NCBI GenBank assembly: GCA_001179505.1
Contig: CDMY01000837.1
Span: 1-16,191, forward strand
Length of the DNA stretch: 16,191 bases
Origin: Vitrella brassicaformis CCMP3155
Lineage: Eukaryota > Protista > Chromerida
Direction: 5' to 3'
How positions within the stretch are numbered: the stretch's first letter is position 1; every line of letters starts with the position of its first letter. Made by a program: the position numbers and the translations under genes. Of this stretch, positions 1-16,191 are shown in pieces. The notes beneath the pieces were generated by a model, which was given only the letters and a program-made list of their open reading frames with translations, was not told the DNA's origin and did not search any database.

Positions 1-181
1 ACGAACACTGTGACTTTGCACTGACAAGGCGCTCTGAGGACCTCCCTCCTTTGCTGAAGCTCTGATTAATTTTTCCGTCCCGGACGAACACTGTGACTTT
101 GCACTGACAAGGCGCTCTGAGGACCTCCCTCCTTTGCTGAAGCTCTGATTAATCTTTCCGTCCCGGACGAACACTGCGACT
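1..181. repeat. 83-bp tandem repeat, 2 full copies plus a 15-bp partial; may extend left of the window
   Basis: Units at 1-83 and 84-166 (acgaacactgtgactttgca...ttccgtcccgg) differ by one base (ttttt vs tcttt). A third unit starts at 167 and diverges after about 15 nt. Confidence 0.95.
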
Positions 182-311: not shown

Positions 312-2529
312 ATGATACCAAGACCAGGGTTTGACTCCCATGCTTCCATCAAATTTGTTCTCAGGGACAGTGCAATGGACGGCAATGCCAACTTTGCTGA
401 TCTGGAGGCACTGGAGCCCGACGTGAAAGTGCCCTTCTACATCTATCAAACGCCGGCGATGAGGAAGCTGTACGACGGCTGTCAGCGCACTGCACTCAGC
501 ATTCTCGACGGAAGGTGGCCTCCTCATTTGCCCAAGGGCATGGGTGATGTCAACAGAAAGAACTATGGTGTGTATTCCGATTGTTCGGCCTTCGAAAGAG
601 AGAACATTCCCCTCTTTCAACGTTGCAGATGAGGTCTTCTGGCTCGATCAGCTCTGGAACGATTCTTGGAGGACGTTTGACCCAGAAGATGCCCTCGTCT
701 TTGTTATCCCGGTGTATCCTGGTGCGTACACCGACTGCAAATGTCTGAATCACTTCTGTGATTTCTATATGTTCTTAGTATTGTCTCTTGAGCAAGCCTG
801 TGAAGGAGACCGAAATCAGACTCACGCACTGGCCGAGGCAGCAGTGAGGGAGGTGAGATATGAATGCTTGCCTCTTACACTGATGCGTGCTTGTTCAGAT
901 CATGCAGCTGCCCTACTTTGGAAGGAACGAAGGACTTGATCACATTGTAATGGTAGGCGCAAATACACAGGAAATGGACTTGCTGGTAAGGCTGTTGACT
1001 CGTCAGGGAATTGATTGGCGATTTACACATACGAAGAACAAAAGCATCAAAAGAGCATTCGGCAGGCGGTTTGCAGCATTGGCAAAAAAAATCTCATGGG
1101 GGCGAAAAGTCGCTGAGAGAGGTTCGTTACCGGGAATCTATCTCTGTGTATCTTGGCATTGATACACCACCAACCTTTCCAGGTTACGGTCACATTGGTT
1201 GTGCGGTGACATCACCTTTCACGTATGCATCGCGGAAAAAGAAAAGGAGAGAGAGAGAGAGAGAGAGAGAAAATCGCTTCCACTTATTTCTCTCTGTCGT
1301 GTCAGCTCAGTCCTGACCTTTCTGCAGAAAGGTAATCAGCCATTTGAAAAAGAAAGCCTTCTGGAGCGCGGCCTAATAGACGCAAGAGATGTCTTTGAGG
1401 ACAACTGCATACACACCGCCCGCAATCCACCGTCGAAACATGACTGGTTCGCAAGAGATTACAGCATGTTCTTCCAGGGTGAGGCATACAAAGGCAATTC
1501 GTGCCTGTCTCAACATAGTGCTAATGGCTCCCCTCAGGTCAAACGAGTTTTCGGCGTGGGTACATCTACCGACGACTTGCTTTTCAACATCTTGTTGGCT
1601 GGAATTTCACCGCCAAGTCATGTCTTAGGCAAAACATTACATGTCGCAGGAACCCAAACGTCTTCGTTTCTTCGTCCACAAACAAGCTCCTGAATTTGGT
1701 CGGGAGCGACACTCAGATGCAACAACTGCTCCCGAATTGCCCGCGTCAAGCTAATGAGAGACTTTTGTTTGATGATGCCTCTTTCGGTGGGCATTCTCAA
1801 GAGCCTGGGCTTGGAAAGTTTGAGGGATGCCGACTTCAAGTATCAACGAAAGACGCGAATGTAGCAGCCCGCAGGGCTGCGACCTTCCTGCATCGGCTTG
1901 CAAACTCCAAGTTGAATCTCTGTTTCAGAGGCGATGATGTGACGTCATCGCGATACGTGGATGGATTCAGAAGCCGCACTCTCAACGTCTTAATCACGGA
2001 GGCTGAGGAAATGTTCAAATACGCGATGCCTTTCCAGGTTCCGAAGAACAGCTTGAATTCACTTTGTTCCGCGTTTTCCGCCTCTCTCAGTGCGAAATTC
2101 CTTGGCGCAATTTCACCTTTGTCATTGATGGGCCTTTGTTCAAGGCAGATCCCCGAAAGGCTCTGACTCCTATCCTCGAGGAGGTCTATGGAGATCATGC
2201 AGCCATCAGAGAGAGGCTGCGGCTCATGGATTATTATAGCAAGAAGATCTTGTGGGACGCACCTGGCAGCACTACGGCACGCTCAGTGCTTCGAGCCATG
2301 ACACGACAATGCCTAACTGAAAAGGCGAAGGCCGACTTCATCAGAAGAACGTCTAAATGGAAACATGGTGAGTGGATGCGACTATGCAACGCGGGCGGTA
2401 TGCATGCAATTCTCAGATATTCAAGGCGCATCGACAAATGAGGGAAATGTTCGAGACCATCCTCTCTTCTGGAAATGCTCGTTCCCTGACCATTCAGCAC
2501 CACGTGAGGAACAATTCGGCCAGCATTGA
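312..2529 (+). CDS. Exostosin-like (GT47/PF03016-type) glycosyltransferase, paralogue 1, multi-exon; 5' end uncertain
   Basis: Manual GT-AG splicing gives an open frame. Introns: 568-628, 722-778, 853-898, 953-1006, 1122-1182, 1223-1305, 1479-1537, 2038-2090, 2368-2416; stop TGA at 2527-2529. Motifs PFYIYQ, WRTFDPEDALVFVIPVYP, RNEGLDHIV, MFFQG and SKLNLCFRGDDVTSSR match the exostosin pattern (R..DP..A..FFVP; G.DH; FF.G; S.FCL.P.GD...S.R). A possible acceptor at 290 suggests further upstream exons. Confidence 0.8.
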
Positions 2530-2728: not shown

Positions 2729-3450
2729 TCACTCACTCCTCCTTTTCTTCGGGCGCTCCTCCTCACTATCATCTACGACCATCTCACCAGACTGGTAGTG
2801 CAGGGCCTCCATCTCCCGCCTGTAATCGATGGCCATCTGCTTGGCCTCTTCGTCGCCGTACTTCAAGGACTTGCTCTTCTGTTCGCCGCCCTGGTACCAT
2901 CTGGCCAGCCATCTGTGCTTGCTCTTGTCGTAGCTGACGCCCCTGACACCGCTCTGTCGCCCTGCCGGCGCTCGCACAGACGCCCGCCCGGTGCGCTCCA
3001 TCTCGGCACGGTGCTGCTCAGCCAACACCTGACATGCACACAGATACATACAGGTGCATCATGAGGCTGACAAGAAAGAGCCTGAACTTCAGCCGATTAC
3101 GTGGTTACCTTGGCCTCGTCCCCGTGCTCCTTGACAAGGAAGTACTTGTGCTTCAGCTTGCCGTCAGCCTCCATCATGGGTTCGTTTGGCCTGAAGTCCG
3201 ATGAAGCTGGGTTTGAGTCCTATGCAGGCGCAGGTTCAGTGAAATGAGGTCAGAGGGACACGAGCAGCTGAGGGAAATGATCTGAAATGGACAAACACGG
3301 CTGCGGTGAGTCTCTGTACATGTGCGCAACGCAGCACCGCAACAGCCAGACATACGCACCCCACACACATGGATGGATGGATGGATGGACCTGTTGTGGG
3401 TGTGATTCATCACTCTCCCTGAGGCCGTCCTCGTCCTCTACGTCCACCAT
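2729..3450 (-). CDS. AP2-domain (ApiAP2-like) DNA-binding protein, ~156 aa, 3 exons: one partial and one near-complete AP2 repeat
   Basis: Exons 3450-3391, 3219-3109 and 3028-2729 are all phase 0 with GT-AG ends. Translation includes ...EADGKLKHKYFLVKEHGDEAKVLAEQHRAEMERTG (C-terminal half of AP2) and QSGVRGVSYDKSKHRWLARWYQGGEQKSKSLKYGDEEAKQMAIDYRREME (AP2: GV...W...W...KYG...A...A...R). The protein ends in an NLS-like RPKKRR. Exon 1 is less certain. Confidence 0.85.
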
Positions 3451-3452
3451 CA

Positions 3453-3500
3453 ATCCAATGAAAATTTTCGTTCATCATCCAATGAAATTTTGCGTTCATC
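3453..3500. repeat. 24-bp tandem duplication in the short divergent intergenic region between AP2 and GT47-2
   Basis: atccaatgaaaattttcgttcatc (3453-3476) and atccaatgaaattttgcgttcatc (3477-3500). Confidence 0.85.
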
Positions 3501-3672
3501 AACACCCCAGCATGCGAAAAAAACCCGTCGGGGAACATTGGGATTTATATCTCTGGAGTGGCTGCCCAGGCCTCCGGACGGGGGTCTGCTGAGTGCCTGT
3601 TGTCCGAAATTGTATCACTCACGCTCCTTCTGTCACTAGCATCGCTTTCTGTTCTGGAAAACACGACTGACG

Positions 3673-5876
3673 ATGTCAGGCACATGGCTGTTGTTTCCGT
3701 GTTTCTCTTGCCTTTGGCTCTTTGAATGTGTCAAACTGTCCGTTTGTGTCAGCCACCATCATCGGCTCCTAGAGACGCCCTCATTCTCTCATAATTTCGC
3801 ATTCAATAACCAACGGATGAACATCATCCAAGACGCCAGCAACGACTTCGCCGATCTAAAGGCACTGGAGCGGGACATTGAGGTGCCGTTCTACATCTAC
3901 CAAACGCCGTCTATCAGGAAGCTTTATGACCTATGTCAAGAGAGCGCGCGTAGCATTCTTGAGGGCCGATGGTCCCCTCATTTCCCTTTAGAGAATAGGA
4001 AGAACACTAACGAGATATACTGGCTGGACCAATTATGGAACGATACATGGAGGACGTTTGACCCTGACAAAGCGCTCGTCTATGTCCTCCCAATCTATCC
4101 CGGTGTGTCGATGAACAGTACGGGGGAAAGTGAGTCATTCCACTTGAGCGCTTGAGTTTCGTGTATTTGGTCCAGTTCTGCTGTATCATCGTTCGTGCAA
4201 GGAAGGGAATAGGAAGAAGATACATGCACTGGCAGACAAGGCTGTTAAGGAGGTGAGACATCCTATGAACATATATGAATGGGTGTAGCATTTGTTCAGG
4301 TGACGGAGACCCCACAATGGGAGAGAAACCGCGGGCTCGACCACATCCTCGTGGTGAGTGTGTACTCATCCATGGCTCATGGCAAAACGATGTTTGTGTC
4401 ACTGGATTGGCTTTCTCATAATGCAGCTGACCGATTTTGAGTTTAAGTACCCTGGTCGCATGGACATGGTATTTGGGAGAGCGTTTTCGACAATTGCGAG
4501 GAATATCACACAGGGGCGGCACCTTGCAGACAATCGTACGGAGACAGAAGAAAAATGACCAGCCATCCGCAACGCACATCTCGTCGAGTATCCTGTCACA
4601 GAGAGGGGCCTCTTTGGATGTGCTGTCACGATTCCCCACACGTATGCGAATCGCCCATAAGTATGCGAATCGTCCCTGATGCATGCACGCATGACCTCAC
4701 ATTGCTTACATTCAGGTCATCTCTGACAGCGCTGCAAAAAGCCTACCAGCCTTTTGAGAAGGAAAGCCTGCTGAAGCGCGGACTCATCCAGCCGACGGAC
4801 GTGTTTGAGGATGACCGACTTGCCTTGGCTTTCGATCCTCCCTCGAGACACGACTGGTTTCAACGCGACTACACGATGTTCTTTCAAGGTAGATCTGGAC
4901 TTGCAGGTACCATACGAATACGCTGACGGTGTGCAGGACACTTGCACAACGGTCGTCCGTATCGCAAATCCGCTTTTAAGCATTTGCCGGGATGGCGCTA
5001 CGTGCCAGGAACTTGCACGGATTGCCTCCCAAGAACCAATGTCTTTGTCGCATCGGGACTCGTGTCAAAACCGACATACCCTTTATGTCCCCGCCAAAGG
5101 GATATCACTCGCGGTACACGCGTCCCAATGGGCAGGTTCGAGCAGTGCAAAAGTGCGGCAAGGAACCACACAGATCGCCTCTTCGAGACAGCAACGTTTA
5201 TGCATCGTCTGGCTAACTCCAAGTTGAATCTATGTTTTCGTGGTAGAGACGTGACGAGCTCGAGGGTTGCCGATGCTTTTTGGGCCCGGACGCTGAACGT
5301 CCTGATAAATGAGCTTGACGACGTTTTCAGATACGGCATCCCCTTCCAGTGCGAAATCCCATGGAGGTATGCAGAAAGGACAGTGACGTTAGCACACGAC
5401 CCGTATTGTGGGGGTCGGCGCTGTTCCGCCCTACGCAGGAATTTCACATATGCAATCGAGGGCTCTGTTTTCGAGCAGGACCCTCGCGCAGCGCTAAAGC
5501 CCATACTGGATGAGCTCTACAAGGACCACCGAGCCGTCACAAAAAAGCTGCGCCTGATGGACTACTACAGCAAAAAGATACTGTGGAATGCACCAAAAAG
5601 CGAGACAGCAAGGAGTGTGCTCCGCGCAATGACACGGCAATGTCTCACTAACGAGGCGAAGCTCGACTTCATTGAAAGGACTAGCAAATATGGTAAGCCA
5701 TCCATTCACACAGCGATGCAGAACCGCCGCTGGCTGGAATCTCGTCTGCGCGTGTCGGGGGGGAAGGTACGGCAGCGAATGTGCGGGACCATCCCTTGTT
5801 CTCCGAATGCACTTTCCCTGACACGTCGGTGAAGAGTGACGAGCAGCGAAAAGCGCATAGCAAGAAGATACTGTGA
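3673..5876 (+). CDS. Exostosin-like (GT47) glycosyltransferase, paralogue 2, multi-exon; start and last acceptor uncertain
   Basis: Introns: 4103-4175, 4253-4299, 4354-4426, 4536-4601, 4642-4715, 4889-4936, 5367-5438, and 5693 to either 5721 or 5766; stop TGA at 5874-5876. Exon-by-exon colinear with paralogue 1: VPFYIYQTP, WLDQLWNDTWRTFDPDKAL, RNRGLDHILV, GCAVT, QPFEKESLL, DWFQRDYTMFFQG, SKLNLCFRGRDVTSSR, LRLMDYYSKKILW, NVRDHPLF. The ATG at 3673 opens a hydrophobic, signal-anchor-like N-terminus. Confidence 0.8.
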
Positions 5877-6342
5877 CTCCACTTGTGTGATGGCCCTGCT
5901 TGGCCTTCTCGTTTCCCCCTCGCCTCCGCCCACCATCGATCCCCTTCACCCCGCACCGTCCTAGATGCTACAGAGGAGAGCACTAATGGACCATTAACAA
6001 TGAACGAGAATTAGAGCTCTCATCGAAATCGCACCGAACGCGCTGCGGTGTATATCTCATTACTTGGAGAGAGAGAGAGAGAGAGAGATCACTGCACAGT
6101 TTTGATCTTCTGAAGAGGTGCCTCGACCACCTAAACAAGGAATGCAGAGCAACACCATGGATCATGTAATTAGAGCCGTCTGTTTTGAACGCGCCCAATA
6201 TCATGAATGAGAATTCTAACACAAAAGCAATATCAGTCGCCCTCAGATCAACCCGTCTATCTACACCCCTTCTCTACCGTCTAAATCGTGGCTTCGACAA
6301 CACACATGTACATCTACTCTGCCGTGCATGCATGATGTGTAC

Positions 6343-6461
6343 CGCTGGAGGGGCGTCTTGCCGTCCGGTCTCTTGCGCATCGTGTCGTACTTCAGAAAGT
6401 CCACACGCGATGCTGCCTCGGGGGTGTCGGCGTAGTCCGCCCTCTGCGGATTCTCGAACAT
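6343..6461 (-). other. Possible isolated coding exon of an unidentified gene (MFENPQRADYADTPEAASRVDFLKYDTMRKRPDGKTPLQR)
   Basis: Real ATG at 6461, GC3-rich codons and a GT donor (gtacac) at 6342. No family recognised and no complete gene model could be built. Confidence 0.25.
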
Positions 6462-6865
6462 TCAGCACTTCCTCGTACGACCCTCCCGGTCTGAATCCTC
6501 TGTGATCCCATGGAGAATGGCGTCATTTTCATAGTGTGGGTCCGTGCTCGTTTGTCTGTTGCGTTGGCACGTAGTGCGAGTTTGTGTGTGCGTGGCGGGC
6601 GGCGCCGCTGGGAGATACGCCAGGCGGGCGCTGAGGATTGTGCTGGCATGTTTGTCGCGTGATTGAGAGTTGGTCGATTGACACAGTTCATTTCATGAGA
6701 GACCGAAACTGCCTGCCGTTGCGCTACGAGTCAATGTATTTTCACATCATACCATTAAATGCATCACCTTCAGCTTCTTCCAATTTTGATGTTAGCGATG
6801 TTTTCTGATGCCAAGCATCACTCATGAGTAAACAGCATACTCACTGTCCAAACGTGCAGTCACTT

Positions 6866-6956
6866 ACAGTCCTCACAGTATGCGTCAAAGAACCCGCCCG
6901 GTCCCACTTTTCCGTCGGTCAACTCTGTACGACACGCATCCCAAGAGAGAGAAAAA
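6866..6956 (-). repeat. 91-bp segment, inverted copy of 16101-16191
   Basis: The reverse complement of 6866-6956 equals 16101-16191 except for one base (tgggatg vs tggaatg). It contains a polypyrimidine/AG acceptor, an exon-like LTDGKVGPGGFFDAYCED and a GT donor. Confidence 0.95.
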
Positions 6957-7492: not shown

Positions 7493-8227
7493 GAGGGGGT
7501 AGACAATTGAGACACAACCACCAGCGACTGGGCCAGACGTTTTGCTGTGGCTCGCCCAGTGGGCAAGAAGCGTCCGATCGGGGTTCGTTACTATCCGTTT
7601 TTTCTCTGTTCGCTAAGCGATGTAGCTTGACACACTGAAGCAAGGCCAGTCAGTGAGGTTGGTTGGGAGAGATTCTCTTCCGTAGAAGCGCTCACCGCGC
7701 CCATTGGCTTTACTGACTGATGCGCTGACTCTGACTGCCTCCTGAAGGATGGTTGGGAGCGTGCTTGAGATCGGAAGAGCAACCTCGAGATCTGCTGGAG
7801 TACACGCAACGTGACGGCAATGACGTCTTGAACATGCACGTCTTGACAAGCAGAAGCGTATCGGAACTACAGAAAGAACTCACATTCGACGCAACAACGA
7901 ATCACCTCGTCATTCTGCGATGGCAGGGCGTCAGTCAGTCACATGAGTGTGTGCTTGTCAGTCAAGCAATGAATGGATTCATTCGTTCATTCAGTGAATC
8001 ACTGCATCACTGCAGACAACCCTCCTCGGTTGCTTCGCTTGGGAGACGGCCGTGATGACTCAAGAGAGAATGACAGAGTGATTCGTTCGTTCATGCCTTA
8101 TCCAGCATCACGTCCCATTGCAGAATCACGTCATGACACTCATGTGTGAGACCTCTAAACTTTACATGGAGCTGTCGATGTGTTTACATCAACAGACGCT
8201 CGTGAATATAATTCCAGCACCCTCACG

Positions 8228-9370
8228 ATGTTGCCTTGGCTGTTGTTTGGATGGCCTTTGGGCTTTGGAAATGTCCTTGGCATCCTCTTGCCGCACTCTA
8301 GGGATAATCAAACTGCATTGGGATCAGTGGAATCTTTGTCGTCGCGTGATGATCCCGTCGTTTGGAGCCTTGCTCCTGTCCACGATTCCCACACCTCCAC
8401 AGGCTACGAACTTCGTCCGCCATTTGCGACAGAATTGGTATCGGACAACGACGAGGGTACCAAGGACAAACCGCCGGTAATTGACTTTCAAAGTGAAGAC
8501 GGAGCCTTGCATTACTACTCTCCCAAGTTCCGGCCGAAGAAAGGGATTGCCTATAGCAAGATATCGCTTGTTGTACCTTTGACCTTCAAGTTCTTTGGCG
8601 CCTGTCTTGACAACTTGGTGGGGTATTTCTACAACGGAACGCGGCTCCCAGACCAAATGATCCTGCTTGTTTCGGAGTTCGATCACAAACCCTCGTCGAA
8701 AGCACGATGCAAAAGCTTGGTTGCTGATTGGGTAGAGAGAGGTCTCAATGTCTCCATGATAGCACGAGGCGGGATCCACCTCATAGGAGACCAAAAAAAC
8801 TACGGATGGTCCCTATCCAGCCAACCTGTCACGACATTCTTTGACGTTGATGATGTCCCTCACCCCCAAAGGATTGAAATACTTGAAGAATATTTCAGCC
8901 ACGATCCAAGCATTGATTACTTCCTTGCAGGATACACGCCACTCAAGGGCAGACCGAACAGGCTATTTTATGAGAGAATCGAAGTGGGGAAGTTATCGAC
9001 GCGATACAATCTCAGGCCTGAAGACATTCGGCCGACTTACAGCAGATTCTATCAAGAATATCAAAAAGAATTTGCGGACCCCTTCACGAAGGGACTGCCT
9101 TGCTGTTGTGGTGCAGTGTCGAGAAAAAAAGTACCTAACGGATGGCCAACAGTTCGGACGGATTTGCTTCCTGTAGCAAACTTTTCTGAAACGCTTCGTG
9201 ACTTTGAAGATTGCTATATGTTCTTGACGCTGAATTGGAGAGGATATAATTGTTACACGGCGGGTCACATTGATCTTGGCTATTATGTGAGAGGAAGCTT
9301 CAGGAAACTTGGGCATTGCTTAAATGCTACCCTCATAGAGCGACCCTCTGGTCGTTTCTCTTTGTTTTAA
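8228..9370 (+). CDS. Intronless GT-A fold (GT2-like) glycosyltransferase, 380 aa, with N-terminal signal/anchor
   Basis: Single ORF with first ATG at 8228 (the track's 8180 start is GTG). Hydrophobic N-terminus MLPWLLFGWPLGFGNVLGILLP. GT2-type motifs ISLVVP, PDQMILLV and QKNYGWSLSSQPVTTFFDVDD..HPQRIEIL, equivalent to (A)RN.G...A.G.YI.FLD.DD...P..LE with a DxD motif. Confidence 0.75.
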   Translation: MLPWLLFGWPLGFGNVLGILLPHSRDNQTALGSVESLSSRDDPVVWSLAPVHDSHTSTGYELRPPFATELVSDNDEGTKDKPPVIDFQSEDGALHYYSPKFRPKKGIAYSKISLVVPLTFKFFGACLDNLVGYFYNGTRLPDQMILLVSEFDHKPSSKARCKSLVADWVERGLNVSMIARGGIHLIGDQKNYGWSLSSQPVTTFFDVDDVPHPQRIEILEEYFSHDPSIDYFLAGYTPLKGRPNRLFYERIEVGKLSTRYNLRPEDIRPTYSRFYQEYQKEFADPFTKGLPCCCGAVSRKKVPNGWPTVRTDLLPVANFSETLRDFEDCYMFLTLNWRGYNCYTAGHIDLGYYVRGSFRKLGHCLNATLIERPSGRFSLF

Positions 9371-11948: not shown

Positions 11949-12132
11949 GATGGAGATGGAGATGCATGTGAGGTTTGAAATGTGTCTAATAAACACATGT
12001 GGCTGTATTTCGCAGATAGAACGAGGTTTAGATGCTGTCACGGTTCCGTACACGTTTGCAAGTTGTCAGCGAATGTCTGGTGTTTAACTTCCTTCGTCCT
12101 CTGCCTAATGCTCTCACCGTCACTGTTACCGC

Positions 12133-12403
12133 CGTTCTGTCCCGCGGTGTCTGTGTCCGATGTGCTATGAGTAATAGCACAAAGCTCGAGGATGTTGGAT
12201 GAAGTGTTGCTGGTGAGTGAGAGTGGGTGTTTGATTGGGTGTGTGAAGGTTTCTGTTACTGAAGGCTCAAGCTATCTCTGTTCGCACACACGGGGGACTG
12301 CTCTTATCAACGACTGCCTGTCTGTCACACAGACGGGCACAAACAAACGAATGAACGAACGATCGGACGACGAACGACGAACGAACGCACGAACACACGA
12401 TGC
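12133..12403 (-). repeat. Left arm (271 bp, uninterrupted) of a large inverted repeat
   Basis: Its reverse complement matches 13460-13521 joined to 15419-15652. It holds the unsplit target gtCCGAtc (plus-strand gatcggac, 12361-12368). Confidence 0.95.
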
Positions 12404-13147
12404 GAGGCCCTCTGTGTGACCCTCACCCCCCCGAAAGCATCCGAAAGATAACAAGCAGAGAAGATAGCAGTGCCATCATAGCACTGCTTTTAAGAATGGA
12501 CTCTTGGGAGCGGAAATGGCCGTGAAGTAGTAGAAAAGAAGAGGATGGTCGACTTTCTCTGAGATTGAGACACAACTGATCGAAGAAATCCACCCTGGTC
12601 TGAACACGATCTTCAGCTTGTCCGTGTTTGTTTGACGGGGGAGAAATCGAAACAAAGAAAAGCTACAACAGCTGGACATCTGTAGGATTATGTTTTATGA
12701 CGGCATCAGGCCACCCATGATCCGTGTTCGCATCACGTTTGACTTGCTGCCGACTGTCCCTAATCCTGGCGTAGCGTAGGGAGCCCCCTGATGAGGGTGG
12801 GTGGCTAAAAGTTGTCCGTGCGTCAATGCGCTGGGACAAAGACGATTACATGAACTGCCCTGTGGGGACAGCCACGGGGTCTGTGCAGGCTCGCTGAGTC
12901 AGCGAACTTTGCACTCCATATCGCTGAGAGGTTGCACCCCAATGTTTTGTGTCAGCGTATCGCGGTGATGCTGCAGGGTGATCAGAAAGGGGTATCTGAA
13001 TCATTGATGAGAATCGTGACTGACTGATCCGATCCTCAGAGAGAAACGCTTTGCTAGGAAAGGGAGGGAAGCGTACATTTTTTCTTGTCCTCGCTGTGCC
13101 CTTCCTTTTGGTTTCACGGTGGGGCAGAACGTGTCGTAGACAGAACG

Positions 13148-13266
13148 GGAAGCTCCGCCCATCGGGGGAAGCTCCGCCCTCTCGCGATCCTCACACAGGG
13201 GCAGCTTTGGAAGCTCCGCCCTCTCGCGATCCTCATACAGGGGCAGCTTTTTTGGAAGCTCCGCCC
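13148..13266. repeat. 42-bp minisatellite (2 copies) with four copies of the 13-mer GGAAGCTCCGCCC
   Basis: Units at 13167-13208 and 13209-13250 differ by one base. The 13-mer starts at 13148, 13167, 13209 and 13254. Confidence 0.9.
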
Positions 13267-13459
13267 CAAACCCTAGACAAACCCTCGAGAAGACAGGGCG
13301 GAGGGAGAGAATCACCTTTGACCTCATCCCCAATTGCCGACATCCAGTGTGCAGCAGTTGTTTCATTCGTTTTTCATCGTTTCGGCCTCCCTGTGTTGAT
13401 TCCCATCATCAGCACAGGCAGATTCCAGACCAGTTGTTGTGACCAGCAGCTAGGTGTGT

Positions 13460-13521
13460 GCATCGTGTGTCACGAGTGACACGTCGTGTGTTTGTGCGTT
13501 CGTTCGTCGTTCGTCGTCCGA
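13460..13521 (+). repeat. First part of the right arm of the inverted repeat, ending in the left CCGA TSD (13518-13521)
   Basis: gcatcgtgtgt[+21 bp]ttgtgcgttcgttcgtcgttcgtcgtccga matches the reverse complement of 12363-12403. Confidence 0.85.
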
Positions 13522-13704
13522 AACACGTTCTTACGAGAAACAGACTCTTTCTCACGTGAAACAGACTCTCGAGATCGGAAGTGAATGCATGATTGATTGA
13601 TTGATGGCTCAAACATGTACAAACAATGCGTCACCGTGGCATGTGGTCCACCGCACAGACACACCCACAAACAATCATTCACGGCCATATCGACAATCCT
13701 CACG

Positions 13705-14686
13705 TCATAACAGCTCATCGTCAGGCGGCTCATCATCATCAGGTCGCTTCTCTGGGCTTCCAGACACCTGACGCCACGCCCACTCACGAATGAAGCTCTC
13801 GACTCGTTTGCATTGGGTCAGCTTAAATCCAGCAAGCCCGATGCAACCCAACGATATACGGTCAATTTGAGGCTCGATCGCCTCCTTTGCCGCGGCAGCA
13901 CGTCCACGAGTCCTCCGCCCGTCACCCTCGACGGCACTCGGGTCACTGAATGCACAACAGCACACACCCACAAGCAAGATGTGCAAAGGAACACTCCAGG
14001 AGTACCTCGACGGAACACTCACCTGGGAACTTTACGATAGGCAAACTCAAAAGTCCCATTTGCAGTCCATCCCGCATTCTTCCCCTCCCCCAGCATCCAC
14101 CAGACATCCACCTCCTCCTCTTGCATGTGCACCGCGACACACTGACCAATGAAAGCAGCGCCGCCCTCCAGCTGCTCTGGATCTGCGAGAAAAGCATCAA
14201 CCCAGACGTCATATCACCTTCTGTTCCCCCTCCCCACCCACCTCCCCAGATGAGCAGCAAATCACCCGTCTCGAGCCGCTCGACCTTCTTGACGTATCGC
14301 TCCAGAGCATTCTGGTTTGACTGATTGATGCCGCTTCGCTGACCCACACATGCCGGCGCATGGGCTCGCAGGCCGACCTTCTTCAGTGCATCGTCGAGCT
14401 GCTGGTAACTGGGGGTAGAGATGTACTGTGGCACCTGACAGACAGACAGACAGACAGACGGACAGTGGCCTGGAGCATATTTGCAGGGAACCACCGCCCA
14501 GCAGCTCACGTCGATGTGTGGATGCGTGCGACCAGTCTCCGAGAACGATGATTGCGGCAGAGAAAAGTTGATGCTCTCGCGCTCGTATGTCCCGAGCGCC
14601 AACCTTTTGCAGTAGTCGATCTCTGCATTGGAAAACATCTCGGGCCAGTTGTCCTTGATCTTCTCCATTTCACTTGCCACAGCCAT
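13705..14686 (-). CDS. Multi-exon hypothetical protein inside the TIR element (248 aa from ATG 14686; up to 321 aa if two upstream exons are real)
   Basis: Exons 14689-14510, 14434-14266, 14182-14023 and 13945-13705 join in frame across 75-83 bp GT-AG introns. Translation: MAVASEMEKIKDNWPEMF...THPHID|VPQYISTP...VERLET|DPEQLEGGAAFIGQCVAVHMQEEEVDVWWMLGEG...YRKVPS|DPSAVEG...DRISLGCIGLAGFKLTQCKRVESFIREWAW...DDELL*. Exons 15075-14923 and 14840-14778 also splice in frame. No family recognised. Confidence 0.6.
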
Positions 14687-14739
14687 TGCCTGAACACAAC
14701 CAGGACACACAATTTCGCCCGAACCAACACCAAGCAGTG

Positions 14740-14770
<31 letters not shown>

Positions 14771-14784
14771 CCGTGACCTTCCAG

Positions 14785-15197
14785 GTTGCTGTTCGTGGGC
14801 AGATGGCTCTCTCCTGGCAGCGGGCGGGCAGGCCGTCAACCTGAACCTCGACAGCAGCAATCCGCCGATGCTCCAGGAGAACTTGTGGGATGAGGAAGGA
14901 GAGATGGAAATGGGGGACTCACGGCAGCAGGAGCAGGGTGGGTTGGGCATGGGCATGGGCATGGGTATGATGGGTGGTGAGTCGGCCGTCCGTCCGCCCT
15001 TCTACAACATTCCAGGCCATCAGCAGCTCCCCGGAGGGTCCATGCACCTGCAGCCCCACCTTCAGGCTGCGCCATCGCGGTTCACACTGGACGAGGGCAG
15101 GAGCGGGGGCGAGGGCAGGGGCAGCGAAGGCCCCGGGGGCCGCGATAGTGGTGGAGTGGTGTGTCGGTCATTCTGTCAGTCAGCCACTTTAATTTGA
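14785..15197 (+). other. Coding-like fragment on the opposite strand inside the TIR element (possible captured host exons)
   Basis: Acceptor ccttccag at 14784, GC3-rich codons encoding DSSNPPMLQENLWDEEGEMEMGDSRQQEQGGLGMGMGMGMMG, a gtgagt donor, and a stop at 15195-15197. No real start codon upstream. Confidence 0.35.
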
Positions 15198-15418
15198 CTG
15201 CATTGTTTGTGCGTCTCTGGACTCTCCTTATCCATTTTTATGTTCATATTGACCAATCATTCCTTGATTCGCCACTGCAAAGTGATCTGGAGCCCATTGC
15301 GTGGGTCATTCACTCGATCACTCAGCCATCAATCAATCAATCAAACAATCAATTACTTTCTGGCCGTTCTCGAGTCTGTTTCACGTGAGAAAGAGTCTGT
15401 TTCTCGTGAGAACGTGTT

Positions 15419-15652
15419 CCGATCCTTCGTTCATTCGTTTGTTTGTGCCCGTCTGTGTGACAGACAGGCAGTCGTTGATAAGAGCAGTCCCCCGTGTGTG
15501 CGAACAGAGATAGCTTGAGCCTTCAGTAACAGAAACCTTCACACACCCAATCAAACACCCACTCTCACTCACCAGCAACACTTCATCCAACATCCTCGAG
15601 CTTTGTGCTATTACTCATAGCACATCGGACACAGACACCGCGGGACAGAACG
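15419..15652 (+). repeat. Second part (234 bp) of the right arm of the inverted repeat; serves as the leader of the gag-like ORF
   Basis: Identical to the reverse complement of 12133-12366 except at 15425. It contains an 8-bp-stem hairpin at 15604-15624 (tgtgctat-tactc-atagcaca) and ends 16 bp before ATG 15669. Confidence 0.95.
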
Positions 15653-15668
15653 AGCTTGAGAAGGCAGG

Positions 15669-16172
15669 ATGAAGCTCAGGAGTGGGACAAAGACGGCCGG
15701 CGCCCCTCATGCGAAGGGGATGGCCAACAAGGCCGTTGTGCAGGAGGAGGCCAAGCAACGCAACCGGGGAGAGAAAGCGCTGCTCCACAAAATGCGTGAC
15801 GACAGGCGGAGGGCCATGAAGAATGCTGGGAGCACGGCTGACGTGGCAGCCGTACGGCTCTCAGCAGCTCATCAGGAGGATGAGCCACCAGAGATTGATG
15901 TGAGTCAGCCACTCACACAATCACCGGCCAGGACGCCGAGTGCCATCACACGTGAAGACCTGAGGCAGCTGACCGATGTGCAAAGACCCAAGGTGAGTTT
16001 GCCGAAGTTTAATGGCGTGTCTGGCACATCCATAGAGACATTCATTCAAGCCATCAGGGTCGCAGAGGAACTGCATGGGCAGACAAAGGGCATCTTCTCG
16101 TTTTTCTCTCTCTTGGAATGCGTGTCGTACAGAGTTGACCGACGGAAAAGTGGGACCGGGCGGGTTCTTTGA
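15669..16172 (+). mobile_element. Retrotransposon gag-like ORF, apparently truncated (167 aa)
   Basis: It starts MKLRSG, has a low-complexity linker, then KVSLPKFNGVSGTSIETFIQAIRVAEELHG, which resembles the P.F.G...FI...E start of Ty3/gypsy-type capsid regions. The last ~23 codons come from the 91-bp duplicated segment. No PBS or TG...CA LTR identified. Confidence 0.5.
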
Positions 16173-16191
16173 CGCATACTGTGAGGACTGT
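16101..16191 (+). repeat. 91-bp segment, inverted copy of 6866-6956; may continue beyond the window
   Basis: One mismatch over 91 bp against the reverse complement of 6866-6956. Confidence 0.95.

What the first reader, a model, noticed from the sequence alone, without database searches (positions are those of the whole stretch)
13518..15422. Gene-carrying TIR transposon with a 4-bp CCGA TSD, supported by an empty site in the same window
The element is bounded by 47-bp TIRs with one mismatch. Each TIR is built from two acg(a/t)gaaacagactc sub-repeats, as expected for transposase-binding sites. It is flanked by CCGA on both sides, and the paralogous repeat at 12361-12368 has a single CCGA, which fixes the insertion point. 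A 4-bp TSD gives perfectly symmetric AAC...GTT termini; 3- or 5-bp readings need a 1-nt asymmetry. AAC termini with a GC-rich 4-bp TSD do not fit Tc1/mariner (TA), piggyBac/Kolobok (TTAA), hAT (8 bp), MULE (9 bp) or CACTA termini. I cannot assign a superfamily, so this may be an undescribed family. The near-identity of the TIRs and of the host repeat implies a recent insertion.
Basis: partly seen in the sequence, partly recalled or inferred. Interest (0 to 1): 0.8.

Follow-up and report, generated by a model that had tools for sequence, protein, structure and literature searches.

The report
Sola-type transposon remnant in Vitrella
This is a real, recently inserted 1.9-kb jumping gene in the alga Vitrella brassicaformis, but it is a crippled copy of a known transposon type (Sola), and the gene it carries is the leftover tail of its own transposase, not cargo.

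Summary
Window 13522-15418 is a 1897-bp element with 47-bp terminal inverted repeats (TIRs) that differ at one base. Each TIR holds two 15-nt sub-repeats. The element is flanked by CCGA on both sides, and the paralogous arm at 12133-12400 is an uninterrupted empty site. The genome is Vitrella brassicaformis CCMP3155.

The terminus recurs about 31 times in the genome and never in a reversed-pattern control. All five complete elements I could read have perfect 4-bp target-site duplications (TSDs): CCGA, ATGT, CTAT, CCAC and GGTG.

The interpretation needs correcting in two places:
- **The internal gene is not cargo.** Among 1.84 billion proteins, the only real relative of this spliced gene (P0001, 256 aa) is the C-terminal half of P0002, a DUF7869 protein of the same genome.
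- **A superfamily can be assigned.** P0002 lies inside a 2.6-kb element on contig C667 with a related TIR that has the same first 8 bases (36 of 47 identical overall) and a GGTG TSD. The DUF7869 core motif matches the published Sola1 transposase core, and Sola elements make 4-bp TSDs.

The window copy is therefore a non-autonomous, internally deleted Sola-type element, and a new family for chromerids. The AWWT target preference typical of Sola1 is not met. No intact transposase was found. About 20 solitary termini remain unexplained.

The parts
13518..13521 (.). Left copy of the 4-bp target-site duplication (CCGA)
   Evidence: It is identical to 15419-15422. The empty paralog has a single copy at 12363-12366.
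13522..13568 (+). Left TIR (47 bp), on the 3' side of the internal gene. It starts AACACGTT and holds two 15-nt sub-repeats at 13533-13547 and 13554-13568.
   Evidence: (I3, D19). Twenty-three family ends begin at this same base.
13705..14686 (-). Spliced remnant gene P0001 (256 aa). Exons are 14686-14510, 14434-14243, 14183-14025 and 13947-13708, with the stop at 13705-13707. It is homologous to the C-terminal half of the DUF7869/Sola1-like transposase P0002. The catalytic core is absent.
   Evidence: Searches give the exon map. One search gives phmmer E 1e-12 to P0002 residues 198-422. Searches give the pairwise matches. Searches find no Pfam family.
14687..15371 (.). Non-coding filler between the remnant gene and the right TIR. 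It includes CT/GT and GGCAT-type microsatellites. About 190 bp next to the TIR is shared with other family ends.
   Evidence: One search finds only microsatellite and TIR-proximal matches elsewhere. One search matches window 15227-15418 to L031 and L048. One search shows the reading frames.
15372..15418 (-). Right TIR (47 bp), on the 5' side of the internal gene
   Evidence: The outer 26 nt match the family consensus exactly.
15419..15422 (.). Right copy of the TSD (CCGA)
12133..12400 (-). Empty-site paralog: an inverted copy of the host repeat, uninterrupted, with the single target TCGG at 12363-12366
   Evidence: (I1, I4).
13484..13521 (+). Host repeat, left of the insertion (filled site)
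   Evidence: The host repeat is dispersed, with at least 15 copies at 81-95% identity.
15419..15652 (+). Host repeat, right of the insertion (filled site)

Best explanation
Window 13522-15418 is a non-autonomous, internally deleted member of a Sola-type (Sola1-like, DDD transposase) DNA transposon lineage of Vitrella brassicaformis.

**Proposed mechanism.** A full-length transposase supplied in trans would bind the paired sub-repeats in each 47-bp TIR. It would cut the element out at the AAC...GTT termini and reinsert it at a 4-bp staggered cut. Repair of that cut duplicates the four target bases, here CCGA.

**What the internal gene is.** The 4-exon gene is what remains of the element's own transposase after a deletion removed the N-terminal and catalytic exons. 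It is not captured host cargo.

**Shown here:**
- the termini, the TSD and the empty site;
- the multi-copy family with 4-bp TSDs;
- homology of the internal gene to the C-terminal half of a DUF7869 protein;
- the location of that protein inside a sister element with a related terminus (same first 8 bases) and a 4-bp TSD.

**Inferred:**
- that DUF7869 equals the Sola1 transposase core (motif-level reading only);
- that the sub-repeats are the binding sites;
- that mobilisation was in trans and recent.
For: **1. It is a real mobile family.**
- There are 34 terminus hits against 0 in the control, and 34 against 0 for the 18-nt outer pattern.
- Flanks diverge exactly at AACACG in 23 ends.
- Five of five complete elements have perfect 4-bp TSDs: CCGA, ATGT, CTAT, CCAC and GGTG.
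- There is an in-window empty site and further uninterrupted host-repeat copies.

**2. It is linked to a transposase.**
- P0001's only real relative among 1.84e9 representative proteins is P0002, with E 1e-12 over query 11-236 and target 198-422. Pairwise BLAST confirms this at 7e-10 and 3e-6.
- P0002 is a DUF7869 protein, E 1.6e-27.
- P0002 lies within L050:80-2706 (C667:29466-32092). Its right TIR is AACACGTTATCACGTGAATTGGACT..., 36 of 47 bases identical to the window TIR. The outer 15 nt of its left TIR are intact, and GGTG flanks both sides.
- The gene has the same orientation in both elements, and the stop-to-terminus distance is 183 bp versus 197 bp.

**3. It fits the Sola superfamily.**
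- The DUF7869 consensus is LQxDNCxxENKN...FLPVGHTHEDIDQ. The Sola1-1_AP core is FYSDNCGGQNRNRF...ITHTFLERGHTQS (supplement of PMC3985635). E.10 is Sola1 according to PMC5751038.
- Sola elements have 4-bp TSDs (PMC3627910 and PMC3845634).
- One external DUF7869 element, L086:437-4139, has 22-bp perfect TIRs and a 4-bp TSD, AAAA.

**4. The insertion is recent.** The arms are 99.6% identical and the TIRs match at 46 of 47.
Against: - The equation of DUF7869 with Sola1 rests on reading motifs by eye. No statistical comparison with Repbase or Dfam Sola profiles could be run, because the published fragment has no reference here and was not typed in.
- The Sola1 hallmark target AWWT (PMC3845634) is not met by any of the five TSDs.
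- No intact transposase was found. The C667 copy lacks the N-terminal part with the first catalytic Asp. The only other DUF7869 locus, C843:2999-3777, covers profile positions 226-419 only.
- The left TIR of the C667 element is split by a 336-bp insert.
- About 20 of about 31 termini are solitary and unexplained.
- MMETSP transcript evidence exists for P0002 (as P0004) but not for P0001.
Confidence: 0.78

Rival explanations
1. The element belongs to another or an unknown superfamily and merely captured (transduplicated) a fragment of a DUF7869 gene, so the internal gene says nothing about its transposase.
For: The window copy has no catalytic domain. Its internal 1.5 kb is unique in the genome at the DNA level. 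Other members of the family carry unrelated, non-coding interiors.
Against: The DUF7869 gene P0002 is itself bounded by a related terminus with the same first 8 bases (AACACGTT, then CACG-GAA and two GACT-core sub-repeats) and by a 4-bp TSD. The gene orientation and the roughly 190-bp stop-to-terminus spacing are the same in both elements. A 4-bp TSD is what a Sola enzyme is expected to make.
Confidence: 0.08
2. The DUF7869 lineage is not Sola proper. It is a distinct, so far unnamed group of DDD transposons that shares a short core motif and the 4-bp stagger with Sola1. On this reading the reader's 'undescribed family' would be right at a higher rank.
For: The targets are not AWWT. The termini (AACACG...) differ from the insect Sola1 TIR GGACCG.... 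The Sola link is at motif level only. No paper in the held library mentions DUF7869.
Against: The DNCxG[QE]N[KR]N and GHT motifs, with the same spacing logic, are the conserved core of the two Sola1 representatives in PMC3985635. From my own knowledge of Bao et al. 2009, which is not held here, the Sola groups are described as having different termini and different target preferences. Protein length (650-780 aa) and the one external TIR/TSD example also fit.
Confidence: 0.12
3. It is a local inversion, a palindrome or an assembly artefact, not a mobile element.
For: The window is rich in inverted duplications (I1, I2, I4), and the assembly is a scaffold-level short-read build (PMC4501334).
Against: The same termini occur on more than 25 other contigs with unrelated flanks and perfect 4-bp TSDs. 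There are precise empty sites.
Confidence: 0.02

Closest known systems
Sola superfamily, Sola1 group (Bao, Jurka and Kapitonov 2009; group E.10 of Majorek et al. 2014)
   Same: It is a cut-and-paste TIR element with a 4-bp TSD. The related transposase has the DNCxG(Q/E)N(K/R)N ... GHT core. Full-length relatives are 650-780 aa. Non-autonomous deletion derivatives exist.
   Different: Targets are CCGA, ATGT, CTAT, CCAC and GGTG, not AWWT. The TIR starts AACACGTT, not GGACCG, and is 47 bp with two internal sub-repeats. The host is a chromerid alga. The genes contain introns. No intact autonomous copy was seen.
Sola2 chimeric families of dictyostelids (DFa and PPa families; Bao and Jurka 2013, PMC3627910)
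   Same: They have 4-bp TSDs. Family members share one terminal region but have entirely different interiors or 3' parts, and in some members most of the transposase is deleted. This resembles the heterogeneous interiors seen here.
   Different: The Sola2 core reads DGCAGQYKN...SHG, which is further from DUF7869 than the Sola1 core is. Their TIRs are short (12-21 bp) and their TSDs are AT-rich. They carry Fanzor, which is absent here.
Internally deleted non-autonomous elements that keep part of the transposase gene (for example maize Ds and Drosophila KP-type P elements; from general knowledge)
   Same: The ends are intact, the catalytic part is deleted, and a truncated transposase-derived open reading frame remains.
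   Different: These belong to other superfamilies. No repressor or other function is shown for P0001.

Membership tests
Sola superfamily | 4-bp target-site duplication | tested here: met
   Five of five complete elements have one: CCGA, ATGT, CTAT, CCAC and GGTG. The empty site has a single copy.
Sola superfamily | Terminal inverted repeats bounding the element | tested here: met
   The window has 47-bp TIRs matching at 46 of 47. The termini are conserved in about 31 genomic ends.
Sola superfamily | Encodes, or derives from, a Sola-type DDD transposase | tested here: inconclusive
   The window copy keeps only the C-terminal domain, homologous to DUF7869 protein P0002 at E 1e-12. The sister element on C667 carries the second and third acidic motifs, DNC and HEDID, but lacks the first Asp region. 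The identity of DUF7869 with the Sola1 core was read at motif level from the supplement of PMC3985635 and not scored.
Sola1 group in the strict sense | Preference for AWWT target sites (called a hallmark of Sola1 in PMC3845634) | tested here: not met
   None of the five TSDs fits AWWT. The flanks of solitary ends show no AT-rich consensus either. I therefore file the element under the Sola superfamily with a Sola1-like enzyme, not as Sola1 proper.
Sola1 group in the strict sense | Transposase clusters with Repbase Sola1 in a phylogeny or profile search | not testable with these tools
   No Repbase or Dfam protein library is on hand. The published Sola1 fragment has no reference, so the comparison was left out.
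piggyBac / Kolobok | TTAA target duplication | tested here: not met
   None of the five TSDs is TTAA.
Tc1/mariner-pogo | TA target duplication (2 bp) | tested here: not met
   All TSDs are 4 bp and none is TA-based.
Autonomous transposon | Intact transposase gene between the TIRs | tested here: not met
   P0001 has no Pfam family and no DUF7869 core. A profile of full-length relatives finds only partial copies on C667 and C843 in the whole genome.

The most novel reading that the evidence does not exclude
The DUF7869 transposases, with their conserved C-terminal domain, may form a separate Sola-like lineage that has GC-tolerant, non-AWWT targeting. In that case the intact 4-exon open reading frame kept by this otherwise gutted element (P0001, the C-terminal domain alone) would be a functional truncated transposase derivative, for example a repressor or a TIR-binding or chromatin-binding factor, not decaying debris.
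Probability: 0.12. Interest if true: 0.5.

Novelty: new member of a known kind. Interest (0 to 1): 0.3.

Why it matters
The genome paper for Vitrella reports only 0.17 Mb of class II elements and, in the text held here, names no superfamily (PMC4501334). This work adds four things:

- A Sola-type family is documented in a chromerid, a close free-living relative of apicomplexan parasites, with defined ends, TSD length and empty sites.
- Transposition was evidently recent.
- The Pfam family DUF7869 gets a likely identity as a Sola1-like transposase core.
- One annotated 'unnamed protein' (P0001) is re-labelled as a transposase remnant.

This is useful for annotation and for transposon surveys. 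It does not change the current picture of transposon biology.

Tried and rejected
- **Shared protein as transposase.** A roughly 1000-aa protein shared by two solitary-end loci (L037, L040) looked like a candidate transposase. It has no Pfam hit and at least 172 genomic matches unrelated to the TIRs. It belongs to a large lineage-specific gene family, so I rejected it.
- **The 5.7-kb pair on C307 (L030) as the autonomous copy.** It has N gaps, internal duplications and no coding signal. Its similarity to L031 is at the DNA level in all frames.
- **Partners for the solitary ends.** I tried an nhmmer profile over 10 kb, genome-wide pattern censuses, and a search for a short reverse-complement terminus followed by the matching TSD. 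None turned up a partner.
- **Pfam on P0001 and its exons.** Nothing was found.
- **An alignment artefact.** MAFFT aligned P0001's GRTHPHID with the catalytic GHTHEDID. I treat this as an artefact, because phmmer and BLAST place P0001 against P0002 residues 198-422.
- **TIR/TSD hunt in 80 metagenome loci encoding relatives.** Only L086 gave a clean element. The other pairs look like orthologous genes or transcripts.
- **Host repeat as an LTR with a gag gene.** The adjacent ORF has no Pfam hit, so this stays open.
- **Scoring the published Sola1-1_AP fragment against DUF7869.** I left this out because that stretch has no reference.
- **Papers not held.** Yuan and Wessler 2011 and Bao et al. 2009 could not be read.

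Full report
**Observation**

- The element runs from 13522 to 15418 (1897 bp).
- Its ends are 47-nt inverted repeats that differ at one base. Weaker similarity extends to about 86 nt.
- Each TIR holds two 15-nt direct sub-repeats, ACGAGAAACAGACTC and ACGTGAAACAGACTC, spaced 21 nt.
- CCGA flanks both sides (13518-13521 and 15419-15422).

The surrounding DNA is one arm of an inverted host repeat.
- Window 12133-12367 is the reverse complement of 15418-15652 at 99.6%.
- Window 12363-12400 is the reverse complement of 13484-13521.
- The other arm is therefore uninterrupted and carries a single TCGG at 12363-12366.

**Organism**

- The assembly has 72,700,666 bases in 1064 contigs.
- The internal gene is the NCBI protein 'unnamed protein product [Vitrella brassicaformis CCMP3155]'.
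- The genome paper gives exactly these assembly figures. It reports only 1.5 Mb of transposable elements, of which 0.17 Mb are class II (PMC4501334).

**Is it a mobile family?**

Yes, on four grounds.
- A DNA search of the genome found the TIR on many contigs, while the interior is unique.
- A pattern census with the outer 26 nt, allowing up to 3 mismatches, gave 34 hits and none for the reversed pattern. Three of the 34 are the offset inner sub-repeat, leaving about 31 true ends.
- When 23 ends are oriented alike, homology begins at exactly AACACG and the flanks are unrelated.
- Four complete pairs exist, and each has a perfect 4-bp TSD:

| Contig | Coordinates | Length (bp) | TSD |
|---|---|---|---|
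| C837 (the window) | 13522-15418 | 1897 | CCGA |
| C274 | 5558-6903 | 1346 | ATGT |
| C902 | 3389-4694 | 1306 | CTAT |
| C307 | 109814-115478 | 5665 | CCAC |

Five-bp readings fail in the other three copies, so the stagger is 4 bp.

The host repeat is itself dispersed, with at least 15 copies at 81-95% identity. On C935, C456, C863 and C995 the match coordinates run straight through the insertion point, and C639, C767 and C704 show the same adjacent-match pattern. These are further empty sites, inferred from coordinates only.

**What the internal gene is**

The annotated protein P0001 (256 aa) has four exons on the minus strand: 14686-14510, 14434-14243, 14183-14025 and 13947-13708.
- It has no Pfam family.
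- In the word-index search it found only itself.
- A protein search of the genome gave one weak paralog on C667.
- The exhaustive HMMER search over 1.84 billion representatives returned one real relative, P0002, at E 1e-12, with query 11-236 aligned to target 198-422. It also returned one spurious repeat protein.

P0002 is Vitrella CEM29264.1 and a DUF7869 (PF25273) protein, E 1.6e-27. A slightly longer version of it occurs in the MMETSP transcriptome, so it is expressed. Its C-terminal domain is also conserved in animal DUF7869 proteins. P0001 is therefore the C-terminal half of a DUF7869 protein, without the DUF7869 core.

**The physical link to the TIRs**

The evidence comes from locus L050 (C667:29387-32779).
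- An nhmmer profile of the family termini picked up a right-end terminus 197 bp after the P0002 stop codon.
- Read out, the right end is AACACGTTATCACGTGAATTGGACTAATTCTCAAGTATCAGACTTGC. That is 36 of 47 bases identical to the window TIR, with the same first 8 bases and the same two-sub-repeat layout.
- The outer 15 nt of the left TIR sit at L050:80-94. The rest of the left TIR resumes at 431, after a 336-bp insert bracketed by a repeated CACGT.
- GGTG flanks both ends.
- The genome-wide 18-nt pattern census independently lists the right terminus at C667:32075-32092.

The DUF7869 gene thus lies inside a 2627-bp element of the same terminal type with a 4-bp TSD. The gene's orientation relative to the ends, and the stop-to-terminus spacing (183 bp in the window, 197 bp on C667), are the same in both elements. 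This makes 'transposase remnant' far more likely than 'captured host gene'.

**Which superfamily**

- Twenty full-length relatives from animals and environmental eukaryotes share the core LQxDNCxxENKN...FLPVGHTHEDIDQ and an upstream DGxDQxK motif.
- The supplementary alignment of Majorek et al. 2014 gives the Sola1-1_AP core as ...FDLEKVLTTPQ...FYSDNCGGQNRNRF...ITHTFLERGHTQS. A second Sola1 representative reads SDCCPGQNKN...PGHSR (PMC3985635).
- Muszewska et al. 2017 state that group E.10 is Sola1, and that Sola had no Pfam model at the time (PMC5751038).
- Sola elements make 4-bp TSDs (PMC3627910 and PMC3845634).
- One environmental DUF7869 element, L086:437-4139, has 22-bp perfect TIRs and the TSD AAAA.

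I could not score the DUF7869-to-Sola1 similarity statistically. The published fragment has no reference here, and I left that step out rather than type it in. The AWWT target preference, called a Sola1 hallmark, is not met. I therefore place the family in the Sola superfamily with a Sola1-like enzyme, and not in Sola1 proper.

**Mechanism and status**

The window copy lacks all catalytic motifs, so it must have been moved in trans. The near identity of the filled and empty arms, and of the two TIRs, points to a recent insertion.

No intact source was found. DUF7869 occurs at only two loci in the genome, C667 and C843. A profile of full-length relatives matches only positions 261-452 and 597-642 on C667, and 226-419 on C843. 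Neither includes the first Asp region. An active copy may lie in unassembled DNA or may have been lost.

**Open points**

- About 20 termini are solitary. Each has a sharp outer boundary, 150-740 bp of shared subterminal sequence, and then unique DNA. No partner was found by any method.
- Whether P0001 is expressed or functional is unknown.
C843 and C477 therefore remain unread.

**Verdict**

The finding is real and well delimited, but it is ordinary in kind. It is a new, non-autonomous family of a known superfamily in an under-surveyed lineage. The scan's earlier notes on this genome list other transposons but not this family.

Noticed in passing
L050:80-2706 (C667:29466-32092): A 2.6-kb sister element with a GGTG TSD carries the 5'-truncated, expressed DUF7869/Sola1-like gene P0002. 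Its left TIR is split after 15 nt by a 336-bp insert bracketed by a repeated CACGT.
   Followed up: yes
G000 contigs C12, C164, C214, C407, C491, C318, C1045, C179, C204, C293, C303, C646, C694, C872 and others: About 20 solitary family termini have a sharp outer boundary and no partner end on the contig.
   Followed up: partly
G000:C429:63716-63784: Two termini lie back to back within 69 bp. This is either a minimal TIR-TIR element or a relic of excision or deletion.
   Followed up: no
window 12124-13521 and 15419-15660: The host sequence hit by the element is itself a dispersed repeat, with at least 15 copies at 81-95% identity, many on small contigs. The adjacent ORF at 15669-16172 has no Pfam family.
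   Followed up: partly
L037:1511-3754 (C694) and L040:4872-8355 (C164): A roughly 1000-aa protein with no Pfam hit is shared at 42-50% identity and belongs to a family with at least 172 matches in the genome. This looks like a large lineage-specific expansion.
   Followed up: partly
L086:437-4139 (metagenome contig OODW01000022.1): A DUF7869-encoding element has 22-bp perfect TIRs (AGGACTATTATGAGAATTCACT) and a 4-bp TSD, AAAA.
   Followed up: partly
window 1-181: An 83-bp unit is repeated in tandem about 2.2 times at 98-99% identity, at the very start of the contig.
   Followed up: no
window 6866-6956 and 16101-16191: A 91-nt inverted repeat (99%) reaches the end of the window. It is probably part of another inverted copy of a dispersed repeat.
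   Followed up: no
window 378-727 and 3832-4108; 4942-5829: There are diverged paralogous exons (72-76% at the DNA level) and a weak Exostosin GT47 signal. A weak Glycos_transf_2 signal lies at 8180-9367. Together they suggest a cluster of glycosyltransferase-like genes.
   Followed up: no
G000:C269:73272 and 76393 (L031): Two identical termini with identical flanks lie 3121 bp apart, with an N gap between them. This is either a tandem duplication or a scaffolding artefact.
   Followed up: no
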